A DNA stretch of 63,599 nucleotides, the filler included, from Basidiobolus meristosporus CBS 931.73 (taxonomy: Eukaryota > Fungi > Basidiobolomycota), in NCBI GenBank assembly GCA_002104905.1. It is 4 parts of 4 records of this genome, joined end to end, with 100 filler letters (N's around TTAATTAATTAA, not from the genome) between each part and the next. Parts side by side here need not be neighbours in the genome. Positions count along the whole stretch, not along the records: positions 13,411 to 33,422 come from MCFE01001016.1; 3 more parts are not named here. The stretch is one strand, 5' to 3'. Shown here one piece after another: positions 20,225 to 28,261 of this stretch. How positions within the stretch are numbered: position 1 is the stretch's first letter; every line of letters starts with the position of its first letter. The notes below the pieces were generated by a model that saw only the letters and a list, made by a program, of their open reading frames with translations, searched no databases and was not told where the DNA came from. Both the position numbers and the translations under genes were made by a program.

Positions 20225-21580
20225 ATTGGTTGTAAATTTTGTTTGGTATGCGGTGAGGAGCCAAGGGCAGCCTATTTATAATTGGTATTGAGATGCGGGC
20301 TTACTTGGCCTGTGTTACCAACCAACGTTTGAGCCAATCTCTTTTGAGTACAGCTTCTATCACAACTTTGGTAAGCGTACAATCAGTCAAGCTAACCCCA
20401 GCAATACAATGCCCGGATTCCATGACATCATTTACACGAAAGTGCTTATTGTGCGACAGAGTTAATTGGCTCCTTGCTTGACCTCGATTGTGCACTTTTT
20501 TAGATGGGCACGCTAACCATGATCTCGCAGTAAGTCCGAAGCTATTATAGAGATGTCTAGGGAGCCCGATGAATCAGACTCAAGTGACTAGATAGCACAA
20601 ACAATTGGTGAGGGAAGTACCAAGATCAGCGGCCGGTTCCCAACTCTTGATTGTTGCTTATGCACATCAATCTGTGTATTGTACTTGCATTCAATAGATG
20701 ACTTGCCCAAAGTGACCCTACTCATACCCCTCCTCGATCTGCCAAACAAGCCCATCGCAATGGGTGATGCAATGCTTTTGTAAGTGTCTGACGATTTAGT
20801 ACAAATATATCCTTTGTGTCACTATAAAATCTAACCCTGTTGCTTATTGTATTGATCCCAACGAGTCAATAGCTCCCAGCGTGGACACCAGATGTATCAT
20901 GAATGGTGCTGTTCCTCAACTTCTCATGGGTAGTGCTTTTCCTCAGCTTCTTGTGGACTGCTTTTTATCGGTTACCTTGTCTGCTATCCCGAGTGATGTG
21001 CAGCGTGCTTGTGCTGGTGCTTGTGCTGGTGCCGGAAAAACGAACGTGTAATCTTACTATTAAGTACTTGTCACTGATTACCGCTATTATAATCGTCATC
21101 CCAATGATCGGATTCGAACATCTCATTTAATATAGTTGCTTCTCGTAGCTATTGAGGAAATCTTTTAGCTTTGTACGCAACACAATGATGTGTTTCTGTT
21201 CAACTAATGAATCGTAGGGTATTTCAAGTTCCCAAATCCATTTATAATGAGTATGGCTAACAAAATTGCTGTTGTGAGGTTGTTCTGTATGGAACATTGT
21301 TTTCATCTAGTGATATATTTCTCGGCCTCATATTAACTCGAATATCCGCCTGGAAGTAGAATGAGATGATTAGCAGAGATTTGCAATCCCCTTGGTTAGG
21401 TCTGATATATCTGCTCTAGTTAGCTTACACAGTACAAATACATACTGACCAAAATCAAAATCCAATAATACATCTTATATTTCTTGTGAGCTCATCGAGA
21501 TGGGATGGTTTTGTATAATTCTGATCAAACTGTTAATGGAGTTACAGGAAGTCTACAATATTAATTAATTCTAACTGTTG

Positions 21581-24500
21581 TGTTACGTACTTAAAGAGTA
21601 ATGTCCTTTAGAGAGTACGAAAAAGGGATAACCTATATGTTATCTTGTAGATTCAACGGGGTAGTGTAAGAATATCTCTTAAAAAGGTTAGGGTGGTGAC
21701 TTCGTAGAAATATATTCAAACTAATATTCGTTCCTACTACGCTCTTCTGCCTATAACCAAAACTCCCTTTTTATTTAGTTACTTGTTTGGTATTTATACC
21801 TTGTTGTGAGTCTGGTGATTTGTCTTTGATTTGTTTTTCCCTGGCTACTAAGTCGTCTTTGTATGCGTTGATGTCACTTAGCATCGAGTGACTCTTTACT
21901 CTGTAACAGATGGCCGGCTCTTTCTTAATCTACTTCCACGTAGATTTTCTTTTTGAGACTTCCTTCCGTTAATTATGCCATATTCGTACGCAATGTGTGC
22001 TTTTCTTGCTTATTTCGGGTATCAGCTTCTCGGAGTCTTTATAGGGCCGTAAGTGATCGATGTTTACTGCAAATTGTAGGACTTCTCCTTGATCATCTTG
22101 TAGTAAGTATCCTCCTTTTTGTAGCTTTCTTCTTATTGTGTATGGTCCCTCCCATCGTTGTGCAAATTTGTCCGCTCTTCTATTGCTCACTATATACCTT
22201 AGGACTCTATCTCCTTCATTGAAGATCCGTGGCTGGGGTTGTTGTATGGATCGCAATATTCTTTTTTGTCTTCTTTCTTTTTCTGTTGTCATCGCAGTGA
22301 TTCTTACTTCTTGTAACGTATGTTGTATTTCTTGAAGTCGAATTTTCCATGAATCTTCTACTAATTGCGGTTCTTGCGGTTGCCAATTATCCGGAAGAGT
22401 TAGGTTGTATCCGAATAGTAAGTATGCTGGTGAGTATCCTGTTTCCTCGTGTCGCGTGGACCGGTATATTAATAGAACTTTGGTCAGTTCCAAGTCCCAG
22501 TTAGCAATTTCCTGTGTAAACTTTCCCAATAATCGTTTGATACTCTGATTCAATCGTTCTACTCGACCGTTACTTTTTGGTCGGTAAGCTGTACTGACAT
22601 GAGCTCTTATCCTTAGTTTCTCTAATAAGGTTGTGAAGATAATGCTGGTAAACTGTGTTCCTTGGTCACTGACCAGATGGCTTGGACATCCAAAAGTGGG
22701 AACAATCTCTGTAAGTAGGAAATCTACTACTGTTTCCGTTGTACTTTCTTTACAAGCTCTTGCTAATGGCCAGCGAGTAACGTAGTCCACACATACCAGA
22801 ATATATTGATTTCCGCGGTTTGTTTGCTTGATTGGTCCCATAAAGTCAATGCCTATGACTTCAAATGGCCGATTACATGCAATGTGTTCTTGTTCCAGGT
22901 AAGCAGGGGGAGGCTTATTCTGATATCTAATACATAGTGGACATTCTTGAACTACTTCTCGTACTGTTTCGTACAGTTGAGGTGCGCTGTATTTTTGCTT
23001 TACCAGGTCCCAGGTACGTGCAACTCCCAAATGGCATTGCTGATGAATCTCTTGCACCTCTTCTTTTCCCCGCCCTTCTGGCAACACCTCCCGGGTAGGT
23101 TGTCCTTGTAGGTATAATTTGCCATTTCTTTCTATAAATTTTCGACTAAGTCTTCTTATCGTGCATCTAATTTCTTTTGTGCAATTTTCTACCAATTTTC
23201 CTGTTTGTAAAAACAGTAGGACTGCGTGGTAATAAGGTAGTAGCAATCCTCTGATGTTCCTTTTTCTACTTTTTTTCTGAACCATAGTGCATATTTTCGT
23301 AGCGGTTTCTTCATCCCCTTGACATAACCTTGACAAAGGATCGGCTGGGTTGTTCTTTCCTCTTCGATGGTGAATTGAGAAATCGTATTCCATTAATATC
23401 ATACTCCAGCGGGCTATTCTGCCAATTGGATTTGGCATATTAAATATACTTATTAGGGCCTTGTGGTCAGTATATATTTGGAATTTCCGTCCCAATAAAT
23501 AATGTCGAAAATGCTTCACCGCCCATACTACTGCAAGTCCTTCTAGATGGGAACTTGAATAGTTTTTTTCTGCTCCTTGTGTAGAGCGACTTGCAAAACG
23601 TATTACGCGTTCCTTTCCTTGCTCATCCAACTGCGATAATATTGCACCTAGTCCTTGTTTTGACGCATCCGTTGTGACTATAAATTCTTGCTCGTAATTT
23701 GGATATGCTAGAATTGGTGTATTGCATAATAATTTCTTCAATTTTTCGAATGTTTGTTGCTCTTTTTCCGTCCACGTGAATGGATTGTCCCTTCGAGTTA
23801 ATTGAAATAGTGGTTGTGCTACTACTGCAAAGTTTTGAATAAACATTCGGAAGTATCCCACGGATTGGAGAAATGATAAGACTTCGTTTTTGTTTTGAGG
23901 TGGTCGCATAGATAAATATTTTTCTACTTTTTCTGGGTCTGTTTCTAGGCCATTGAATGTTATTATATGGCCCAAGTACCGTAGCTGTTGCTGCAAAAAT
24001 TGGCATTTCTTCTCTTTTAATTTGAGCCCTTTTTCTTCCAAGATTGTAAGTACGGATTCCAGATGTGTAAGGTGTTCCTCAATCGTCTTGGAATATATTA
24101 TTATATCATCCAAGAAAATTAACACGTATTTCCATAAAATATCCTGGAAGGCTTGGTTCATTGCGCGTTGGAAAGTGGCTGGAGCGTTTGTTAGTCCGAA
24201 GGGCATAACTTTAAATTCGTATAACCCATATCTTGTAACAAATGCTGTCTTCTCTTGGCTTCCCGGATCCATTAAAACTTGCCAGTATCCTGATGCTGCA
24301 TCTAGGGTTGAATAGTATTTTGCATTTATCAATGCATCCCATAATTCTTCTATTCGAGGGAGTGGGTACGCATCTCTTTGAGTAACAGCATTTAGTTTTC
24401 GATAATCCACACAGAAACGGAATGTTCCATCCTTCTTTCGCACCAGCACTACTGGGGCTGCCCATGGTGATTGCGATGGTTCAATGATATTGTTTCTTAG

Positions 24501-28182: not shown

Positions 28183-28189
28183 CGAGCTA

Positions 28190-28261
28190 GCCTGCTTAGC
28201 GCAGTGGTAGCGCGTCAGTCTCGTAAACTGAAGGTCGCCAGTTCAATCCTGGCAGTAGGCA
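28190..28261 (+). tRNA. tRNA-Thr(CGT)
   Basis: Full cloverleaf: GCCTGCT/AGTAGGC, D stem GCGC/GCGC, TCAGT-CTCGTAA-ACTGA, GCCAG-TTCAATC-CTGGC; T-run at 28264-28269. Confidence 0.9.

What the first reader, a model, noticed from the sequence alone, without database searches (positions are those of the whole stretch)
21577..28261. Ty3/gypsy family that inserts 7-10 bp upstream of tRNA genes (two independent events)
Seen: an intact element ends at 26684, 10 nt before tRNA-Pro. A solo LTR of the same family ends at 28182, 7 nt before tRNA-Thr. The 4-bp TSDs differ (GTTG, CGAG), so the events are independent. Both have the same orientation, with the element 5' end head-to-head with the tRNA, and both fall in the Pol III initiation window. 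Established: S. cerevisiae Ty3 targets Pol III start sites through TFIIIB/TFIIIC, and Dictyostelium DGLT-A/TRE elements also target tRNA genes. Inference: a position-specific Pol III-tethered integrase (no chromodomain, short C-terminal tail after GPY) in what looks like a distant fungal lineage. It appears recently active (identical LTRs, intact 1439-aa ORF).
Basis: partly seen in the sequence, partly recalled or inferred. Interest (0 to 1): 0.88.

Follow-up and report, generated by a model that had tools for sequence, protein, structure and literature searches.

The report
tRNA-gene-targeting gypsy retrotransposon in Basidiobolus-like fungus
An apparently active Ty3/gypsy jumping gene in a Basidiobolus-like early-diverging fungus has landed twice, independently, within ten bases of the start of two different tRNA genes; this is the insertion habit known from yeast Ty3 and fission-yeast Tj1, now seen in a fungal group where the papers I could search do not report it.

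Summary
A 5,104-bp Ty3/gypsy element lies on the minus strand. It has identical 328-bp LTRs, a 4-bp GTTG duplication and an intact 1439-aa gag-PR-RT-RH-IN reading frame. Its 5' LTR ends 10 nt before tRNA-Pro(UGG). A solo LTR of the same family (96.6% identical, CGAG duplication) ends 7 nt before tRNA-Thr(CGU), in the same divergent orientation. A U6 snRNA gene follows 125 nt later, and a TTAGGG telomere lies about 6.5 kb beyond the element.

Two random insertions this close to Pol III genes have a chance of about 4e-6. The nearest host-gene relatives are from Basidiobolus.

The integrase model shows NED-NTD-CCD-long helix-SH3 and then 23 disordered residues. It therefore lacks the chromodomain that Ty3 uses to hold Brf1, as does Dictyostelium DGLT-A.

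The most likely mechanism is integrase tethering to the Pol III initiation complex, but this is inferred from only two sites. Other genomic copies could not be reached with the tools.

This kind of targeting is already known in Saccharomycotina, S. japonicus and Dictyostelia, so this is a new member of a known kind.

The parts
21577..21580 (.). Target-site duplication GTTG, left copy (3' side of the element)
   Evidence: Read directly; identical to 26685-26688
21581..21908 (-). 3' LTR of the full-length element, 328 bp, TGTTAC...GTAACA
   Evidence: 100% identical to 26357-26684
21909..21930 (-). Purine-rich stretch next to the 3' LTR (AAGAAAGAG within GATTAAGAAAGAGCCGGCCATC); putative polypurine tract, though it does not abut the LTR
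   Evidence: sequence read directly; function inferred
21969..26288 (-). Single 1439-aa gag-pol ORF. Window coordinates of the parts: Gag + CCHC knuckle 25551-26129; protease 24819-25202; RT 23961-24443; RNase H 23385-23774; integrase NED-NTD-CCD-linker-SH3 22044-23255; 23-aa disordered tail 21972-22043
   Evidence: ORF; Pfam RVT_1 4e-40, RT_RNaseH 2e-38, rve 6e-15, Integrase_H2C2 1e-10, RVP_2 7e-12, Ty3_capsid 4e-9, no Chromo hit; integrase model pLDDT 87; Foldseek to PFV and Ty3 integrases
26334..26352 (-). Primer-binding site TGGTGCTCACAGCAGGGGG, 4 nt after the 5' LTR. It implies a primer tRNA ending ...CCCCCTGCTGTGAGCACCA, which is neither of the two tRNAs in the window
   Evidence: no self-priming complement longer than 8 nt found in the LTR
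26357..26684 (-). 5' LTR of the full-length element. Its U3 start (26684) faces tRNA-Pro. TATA-like TATAAATA at LTR position 111 (element sense)
26685..26688 (.). Target-site duplication GTTG, right copy; positions -10 to -7 of tRNA-Pro
26695..26766 (+). tRNA-Pro(UGG) gene with A and B boxes, followed by a T4 terminator
   Evidence: ARAGORN; Rfam tRNA 57.5 bits
27855..27858 (.). Target-site duplication CGAG, left copy, of the solo LTR
27859..28182 (-). Solo LTR of the same family, 324 bp, 96.6% identical to the full-length LTRs, same orientation
   Evidence: gapped alignment, 7 mismatches + 2 indels
28183..28186 (.). Target-site duplication CGAG, right copy; positions -7 to -4 of tRNA-Thr
28190..28261 (+). 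tRNA-Thr(CGU) gene, followed by a T5 terminator
   Evidence: ARAGORN; Rfam 69.9 bits
28387..28508 (+). U6 snRNA gene, the third Pol III gene of the cluster. TATATA box at about -29 to -24, T5 terminator, no LTR in front of it
   Evidence: Rfam U6 79.5 bits, E 5e-19, full model 1-105; upstream sequence

Best explanation
This is a young, probably still mobile family of Ty3/gypsy (Metaviridae) LTR retrotransposons in a Basidiobolus-like fungus. Its integrase places new copies a few base pairs upstream of Pol III-transcribed tRNA genes, at or next to the transcription start.

The most likely mechanism is that the intasome docks on the Pol III initiation machinery assembled on the tRNA gene (TFIIIB/TFIIIC, or Pol III itself). 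The two strand transfers, 4 bp apart, then fall between the roughly -30 TFIIIB site and the mature 5' end. This would also fix the orientation, with the element transcribed away from the tRNA.

The integrase has NED, HHCC, catalytic core, a long helical linker and an SH3-like CTD, but no chromodomain. The contact therefore cannot be the Brf1-chromodomain staple used by Ty3. It would have to go through the CTD, the NED or the short tail.

Shown: the element's anatomy, the two independent insertions and their positions, and the integrase architecture. Inferred: active targeting rather than survival bias, and the identity of the host factor.
For: - Two independent insertions of one family sit at -10..-7 and -7..-4 of two different tRNA genes, in the same orientation. 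The chance of this in the window is about 4e-6.
- The two target sites share no sequence motif. Both had an AT-rich TATA-like stretch at about -30 to -23. This points to recognition of a protein-DNA complex rather than a DNA sequence.
- No other fragments of this LTR occur in the 20-kb piece, so 2 of 2 copies lie at tRNA genes.
- The distances match Tj1, which inserts 5-11 bp upstream of the mature 5' end (PMC4600332), and other Ty3-type elements (review table, PMC5911963).
- The integrase model has the extended CCD-CTD helix (residues 315-349 of the model). The Ty3 structure paper names this helix as the feature that lets the CTD reach TFIIIB (PMC8632968).
- The element looks active: identical LTRs, intact ORF, intact D,D,E and HHCC residues.
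- In sequencing runs of the holder organism, LTR words are about 10-25 times more abundant than internal words, with many variants. This is consistent with many solo LTRs.
Against: - There are only two sites, both in one subtelomeric 1.6-kb Pol III gene cluster.
- The genome-wide distribution is unknown.
- The U6 gene 125 nt downstream of tRNA-Thr carries no insertion.
- Transcription start sites of the tRNA genes were not measured.
- The Ty3 chromodomain, described as essential for Ty3 targeting, is absent, so the molecular contact is unknown.
- The shared orientation has p = 0.5 with n = 2.
- Depth from contigs is not a copy number.
Confidence: 0.72

Rival explanations
1. Integration is not aimed at Pol III complexes. 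Copies are simply retained in gene-poor subtelomeric DNA, where insertions are harmless, and the two tRNA adjacencies reflect survival plus chance.
For: The locus is about 6.5 kb from a TTAGGG telomere. It also holds degenerate Ty1/copia fragments, so it is a region that accumulates transposons.
Against: Survival bias explains a region, not base-pair precision. Both insertions are within 10 nt of a tRNA 5' end, in the same orientation, with intact target-site duplications; p is about 4e-6. The copia fragments are not positioned at Pol III gene starts.
Confidence: 0.08
2. The integrase prefers a DNA or chromatin feature that happens to occur upstream of tRNA genes: a nucleosome-free, bent or AT-rich segment, or a replication-fork barrier. 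It does not bind a Pol III factor.
For: Both pre-insertion sites have AT-rich stretches upstream. Tf1 and Ty1 use chromatin or DNA-bound factors other than TFIIIB. The integrase lacks the Brf1-binding chromodomain of Ty3.
Against: AT-rich, nucleosome-poor DNA is abundant in this 36-44% GC piece, yet both insertions chose the few bases next to a tRNA start. The fixed orientation suggests an asymmetric protein platform. The U6 upstream region has a strong TATA box but no insertion, so TATA-like DNA alone does not attract the element.
Confidence: 0.15
3. The LTR-tRNA units were spread by segmental duplication or ectopic recombination, so they do not represent two integration events.
For: The two units lie only 1.5 kb apart, in the same orientation.
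Against: The tRNA genes differ (Pro vs Thr). The 4-bp duplications differ and each is intact on both sides. The spacers differ (6 vs 3 nt). The flanks share no similarity.
Confidence: 0.02

Closest known systems
Tj1 of Schizosaccharomyces japonicus (Ty3/gypsy)
   Same: - Inserts 5-11 bp upstream of the mature 5' end of tRNA genes, and at other Pol III genes, in a single fixed orientation (PMC4600332).
- About 5 kb long with short LTRs.
- Its copies cluster where tRNA genes cluster, including at telomeres.
- Here the gaps are 7 and 10 nt and both copies share one orientation.
   Different: - Tj1 points the same way as the tRNA; this element points away from it.
- Tj1 has a 5-bp duplication and a stop codon between gag and pol. 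This element has a 4-bp duplication and one fused ORF.
- The hosts belong to different fungal phyla.
- Sequence relationship was not tested, because no Tj1 sequence was available in the tools.
Ty3 of Saccharomyces cerevisiae
   Same: - Ty3/gypsy order PR-RT-RH-IN.
- Integrase with NED-NTD-CCD-long helical linker-SH3 CTD.
- Inserts at the Pol III start site between the TFIIIB site and the gene.
   Different: - Ty3 integrase carries a C-terminal vestigial chromodomain (IN residues 446-511) that staples it to Brf1 and contacts the target DNA. This element ends 23 residues after the SH3 domain, and only 60 nt separate the stop codon from the LTR.
- Ty3 uses a +1 frameshift and a 5-bp duplication.
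- Integrase identity is only about 22%.
DGLT-A of Dictyostelium discoideum
   Same: A single gag-pol ORF, no chromodomain, a short tail after the GPY/F motif (32 aa in DGLT-A, 58 aa here), and insertion upstream of tRNA genes (PMC5006619).
   Different: - DGLT-A sits 13-33 bp upstream, in either orientation.
- It has no intact copies left in D. discoideum.
- Its host is an amoebozoan.
- Phylogenetic affinity was not tested.
Tyl3, Tyl6, Ylt1 (Yarrowia lipolytica) and Beta/Tca8 (Candida albicans)
   Same: Ty3/gypsy families found a few to 30 bp upstream of tRNA genes (review table, PMC5911963).
   Different: All are from Saccharomycotina yeasts.

Membership tests
Ty3/gypsy (Metaviridae) LTR retrotransposon | Direct LTRs ending TG...CA, flanked by a short target-site duplication | tested here: met
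   328-bp identical LTRs, TGTTAC...GTAACA, 4-bp duplication GTTG
Ty3/gypsy (Metaviridae) LTR retrotransposon | Pol domain order PR-RT-RNase H-IN, with integrase after RT | tested here: met
   Pfam hits in that order along the 1439-aa ORF
Ty3/gypsy (Metaviridae) LTR retrotransposon | tRNA-type primer-binding site after the 5' LTR and a purine tract before the 3' LTR | tested here: met
   TGG-initiated 19-nt PBS 4 nt after the LTR. The purine run AAGAAAGAG lies 9 nt from the 3' LTR, so the PPT assignment is tentative
Chromoviruses (Ty3/gypsy with an integrase chromodomain) | Chromodomain C-terminal to the integrase SH3/GPY-F module | tested here: not met
   No PF00385 hit. The alignment to Ty3 stops at the end of the CTD with 23 residues left. 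The AlphaFold model shows a disordered tail, residues 423-440. Only 60 nt separate the stop codon from the LTR
Pol III start-site-targeting retrotransposons (Ty3/Tj1 type; a functional class) | Insertions concentrated within about 1-12 bp of the start of tRNA and other Pol III genes | tested here: inconclusive
   2 of 2 copies in the window, at -10..-7 and -7..-4. The genome-wide distribution could not be reached
Pol III start-site-targeting retrotransposons (Ty3/Tj1 type; a functional class) | Physical interaction of the integrase with TFIIIB, TFIIIC or Pol III | not testable with these tools
   The host Brf1, TBP and TFIIIC sequences are not in the window. No complex prediction was run
Ty3 mechanism in the strict sense | Integrase chromodomain helix alpha-0 binds the Brf1 N-cyclin repeat (PMC8632968) | tested here: not met
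   The domain is absent
Ty3 mechanism in the strict sense | Extended alpha-helical CCD-CTD linker that places the CTD at the periphery of the intasome | tested here: met
   Helix 315-349 in the model at pLDDT about 90. The feature is described
DGLT-A-like elements | Single ORF, no chromodomain, short integrase tail, upstream of tRNA genes | tested here: met
   However, the distance differs (7-10 nt here vs 13-33 bp) and common descent was not tested

The most novel reading that the evidence does not exclude
An active Ty3/gypsy lineage in Zoopagomycota (Basidiobolales) has evolved, or retained, start-site-precise and orientation-fixed integration at Pol III genes without any chromodomain. It would use a different integrase surface (CTD, NED or the 23-aa tail) to hold the Pol III pre-initiation complex. 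If so, Pol III targeting is either much older in fungal Ty3/gypsy elements than the Saccharomycotina and Schizosaccharomyces examples suggest, or it has arisen at least four times. Either way this would be an intact element for working out a second structural solution.
Probability: 0.45. Interest if true: 0.6.

Novelty: new member of a known kind. Interest (0 to 1): 0.45.

Why it matters
Targeting Pol III gene starts is the textbook example of a retrotransposon choosing a safe landing site, and only Ty3 has a structural explanation. That explanation rests on a chromodomain which this element lacks.

An intact, apparently young element with the same base-pair precision, in an early-diverging fungal lineage, would offer three things:
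- It would widen the known taxonomic range of this strategy beyond ascomycete yeasts and dictyostelids.
- It would provide a natural test of how the same target can be recognised with a different integrase surface.
- It would help explain why transposons gather where tRNA genes cluster, here at a chromosome end.

It does not reveal a new principle.

Tried and rejected
- Exact look-up of the polyprotein in public assemblies: not on record.
- Homology searches with RT-IN, with gag-PR alone and with IN alone. The best full-length relatives are only about 35-42% identical (Calcarisporiella 40%). Nothing was found for gag-PR at E<=1e-10, and IN alone gave one 33% hit. No related genomic copies could therefore be fetched to test tRNA adjacency.
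- Metagenome scans with the LTR end and with the polyprotein: no close relatives.
- The Calcarisporiella relative (L004): no detectable LTRs and only a doubtful tRNA-like hit, so it was uninformative.
- Reads. Only Logan contigs were available. They break at the repeat, so the loose ends at the LTR tip gave no usable flanks. The one informative loose end (X3 at 26685) is simply the 3' LTR-internal junction of the same element.
- The Basidiobolus meristosporus locus of the closest SPRY homologue (L005). It is about 70% identical in DNA, has no tRNA and no LTR, and lies at the start of its contig (range 1-19439 of the record). It is not a usable empty-site comparison.
- Self-priming (Tf1-like). 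No complement longer than 8 nt exists between the PBS region and the LTR, so this was rejected.
- A tree with Ty3, Tf1, Tj1 and DGLT-A was not built, because no tool returned those sequences as usable records.
- Complex prediction was not used, because the cognate host Pol III factors are not available.
- The telomere repeat (33166-33422) was kept out of all read and collection searches.
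Full report
**What is there**

The piece (13411-33422) ends in a TTAGGG telomere array that starts at about 33166. ARAGORN and Rfam find three Pol III genes, all on the plus strand within 1.8 kb:
- tRNA-Pro(UGG) at 26695-26766
- tRNA-Thr(CGU) at 28190-28261
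- a full-length U6 snRNA gene at 28387-28508 (79.5 bits). It has a TATATA box at about -29 and a T5 terminator.

A 5,104-bp LTR retrotransposon occupies 21581-26684 on the minus strand.
- Its LTRs (21581-21908 and 26357-26684) are 328 bp, begin TGTTAC, end GTAACA, and are identical.
- They are flanked by the 4-bp duplication GTTG.
- A 19-nt TGG-initiated primer-binding site lies 4 nt inside the 5' LTR. It matches neither tRNA of the window, and there is no sign of Tf1-style self-priming.
- One uninterrupted 1439-aa frame (21969-26288) encodes Gag with a CCHC knuckle, an aspartyl protease, RT, RNase H and integrase, in the Ty3/gypsy order.
- The HHCC and D,D,E residues align with those of PFV and Ty3 integrases.

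A solo LTR of the same family lies at 27859-28182, flanked by CGAG.
- With gaps allowed it is 96.6% identical to the full-length LTRs (7 mismatches, 2 indels). It is therefore an older event. The 87% is an ungapped artefact.
- No other fragment of this LTR exists in the piece.

**Position relative to the Pol III genes**

- The 5' LTR ends 10 nt before the first base of mature tRNA-Pro, with the duplication at -10..-7.
- The solo LTR ends 7 nt before tRNA-Thr, with the duplication at -7..-4.
- Both LTRs have their U3 start next to the tRNA, so the element is transcribed away from the tRNA gene.
- The targets, the duplications and the spacers all differ, and the flanks share no similarity. These are two separate integrations, not a duplicated unit.
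- Rebuilding the empty sites shows no shared target motif. Both tRNA genes had an AT-rich, TATA-like stretch at roughly -30 to -23.
- With three Pol III genes in 14.3 kb of pre-insertion DNA, two random insertions within 10 bp upstream of such a gene have a probability of 4.4e-6.

**Host**

Beside the element lie two ordinary host genes: a SPRY/Ssh4-like gene (15003-16418, minus) and the intron-rich TFIIH p52/Tfb2 gene (17189-19390, plus).
- An exhaustive HMMER search with the larger SPRY exon gave as best hits two Basidiobolus meristosporus proteins (74% and 55% identity) and a Basidiobolus ranarum protein. Hits from other zygomycete-grade (early-diverging) fungi followed: Jimgerdemannia, Coemansia, Dimargaris and Dispira.
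- The B. meristosporus locus is only about 70% identical in DNA and has no tRNA or LTR. The window thus comes from a different Basidiobolus-like species, or from a paralogous region.

**Integrase**

Pfam finds no chromodomain.
- The alignment to the Ty3 polyprotein of PDB 7Q5B runs to the end of the SH3-like CTD (Ty3 residue 1444 of 1547). At that point this protein has 23 residues left.
- Only 60 nt separate the stop codon from the 3' LTR, so no domain has been cut off.
- The Ty3 chromodomain was missed by sequence methods for decades, so I also modelled the integrase from a 71-sequence alignment. The model has mean pLDDT 87 and pTM 0.83.
- The model shows an N-terminal extension domain, the HHCC domain, the catalytic core, a 35-residue helix (315-349), an SH3 barrel (362-416) and a disordered tail (423-440).
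- Foldseek matches PFV and Ty3 integrases over about 400-420 columns.
- The long CCD-CTD helix is the feature that, in the Ty3-TFIIIB structure, lets the CTD reach TBP. The chromodomain that staples Ty3 to Brf1 and "defines with extreme precision" the site (PMC8632968) is absent here.
- Many of the nearest relatives also have short tails, so lacking a chromodomain is not unusual in itself.

**How it most likely works**

The precision, the fixed orientation, the lack of a target motif and the two different tRNA targets are best explained by docking of the intasome on the Pol III initiation complex. That is how Ty3 is known to work, and it is the suspected mechanism for Tj1.
- Shown here: the positions and the integrase architecture.
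- Inferred: the tethering and the partner.
- Because the chromodomain is missing, the contact must differ from Ty3's.
- Rivals are retention in a subtelomeric transposon sink (low, because it cannot explain base-pair precision) and preference for an open or bent DNA segment rather than a protein factor (possible).
- A weak counterpoint to a purely DNA-based preference is that the U6 gene, with its strong TATA box, carries no insertion.

**Abundance and activity**

The polyprotein and its parts have no close relative among 5.8 billion proteins. The best full-length relatives are about 35-42% identical, gag-PR has no hit at all, and IN alone has one 33% hit. This is a previously uncatalogued family.

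Three public DNA runs from one study hold the element. In two of them:
- the LTR is covered by many variant contigs;
- the summed word depth over the LTR is about 10-25 times that of the internal region;
- at least two internal variants exist.

This is consistent with many solo LTRs and several full-length copies, but contig depth is not a copy number. The contigs break at the repeat, so no further flanks could be read. The decisive genome-wide test therefore remains to be done.

**Comparison with what is known**

The review table (PMC5911963) lists Ty3/gypsy elements at tRNA starts in S. cerevisiae and S. paradoxus (Ty3, Ty3p), Yarrowia (Tyl3, Tyl6, Ylt1), Candida (Tca8), S. japonicus (Tj1) and Dictyostelium (DGLT-A, Skipper-2).
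- By position, the closest is Tj1: 5-11 bp from the mature 5' end, single orientation, clustered with tRNA genes at centromeres and telomeres. Tj1, however, points the same way as the tRNA, makes 5-bp duplications and has a gag stop codon.
- By architecture, the closest is DGLT-A: single ORF, no chromodomain, short tail. It sits 13-33 bp away in either orientation.
- Full-text searches found no report of such targeting in Basidiobolus, Entomophthorales or other early-diverging fungi.

**Verdict**

This is a new member of a known kind, not a new principle. Interest is moderate (0.45). It would rise if a genome-wide map confirms the specificity and the chromodomain-independent contact can be identified.

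Noticed in passing
window 28387-28508 (+): Full-length U6 snRNA gene 125 nt downstream of tRNA-Thr, with a TATATA box at about -29 and a T5 terminator. It has an enlarged 5' stem-loop and a 9-nt insertion near the 3' end relative to the Rfam model, and no intron. Together with the two tRNAs it forms a subtelomeric Pol III gene cluster. No LTR lies in front of it.
   Followed up: partly
window 33166-33422: Perfect TTAGGG array running to the end of the piece, that is, a chromosome end. The retrotransposon's nearest end (26684) is about 6.5 kb from it. The array was kept out of read and collection searches.
   Followed up: no
window 29500-32540 (-): Degenerate Ty1/copia element. Frame-broken RT (Pfam RVT_2, E 1e-42 and 7e-24) and RNase H-like ORFs. 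An internal duplication repeats about 950-1170 bp (29511-30052 vs 30457-30997; 30054-30457 vs 31222-31625, 89-91% identical).
   Followed up: partly
window 13612-14411: Several inverted, 70-90% identical copies of a roughly 350-bp segment that also occurs twice inside the copia-like region (30454-30805 and 29510-29860). This is either another repeat family or rearranged copia debris at the left edge of the piece.
   Followed up: partly
window 15003-16418 (-) and 17189-19390 (+): Host genes. One is an Ssh4-like SPRY-domain protein in two exons, with PPxY-like motifs in its C-terminal part. The other is the intron-rich TFIIH subunit Tfb2/p52. The SPRY exon is 74% identical to a Basidiobolus meristosporus protein.
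   Followed up: partly
runs X1/X2 laid on window 26357-26684 (table 5c): Contigs in both runs join the LTR at 26679 to the LTR start at 26357 with six other letters (GAGAAT) between. This looks like two LTR copies lying head to tail somewhere in that genome, as repeated insertion at one target would produce. Not resolved.
   Followed up: no
window 26334-26352: The primer-binding site implies a primer tRNA with 3' end ...CCCCCTGCTGTGAGCACCA. Its identity could not be determined without the genome's tRNA set.
   Followed up: no
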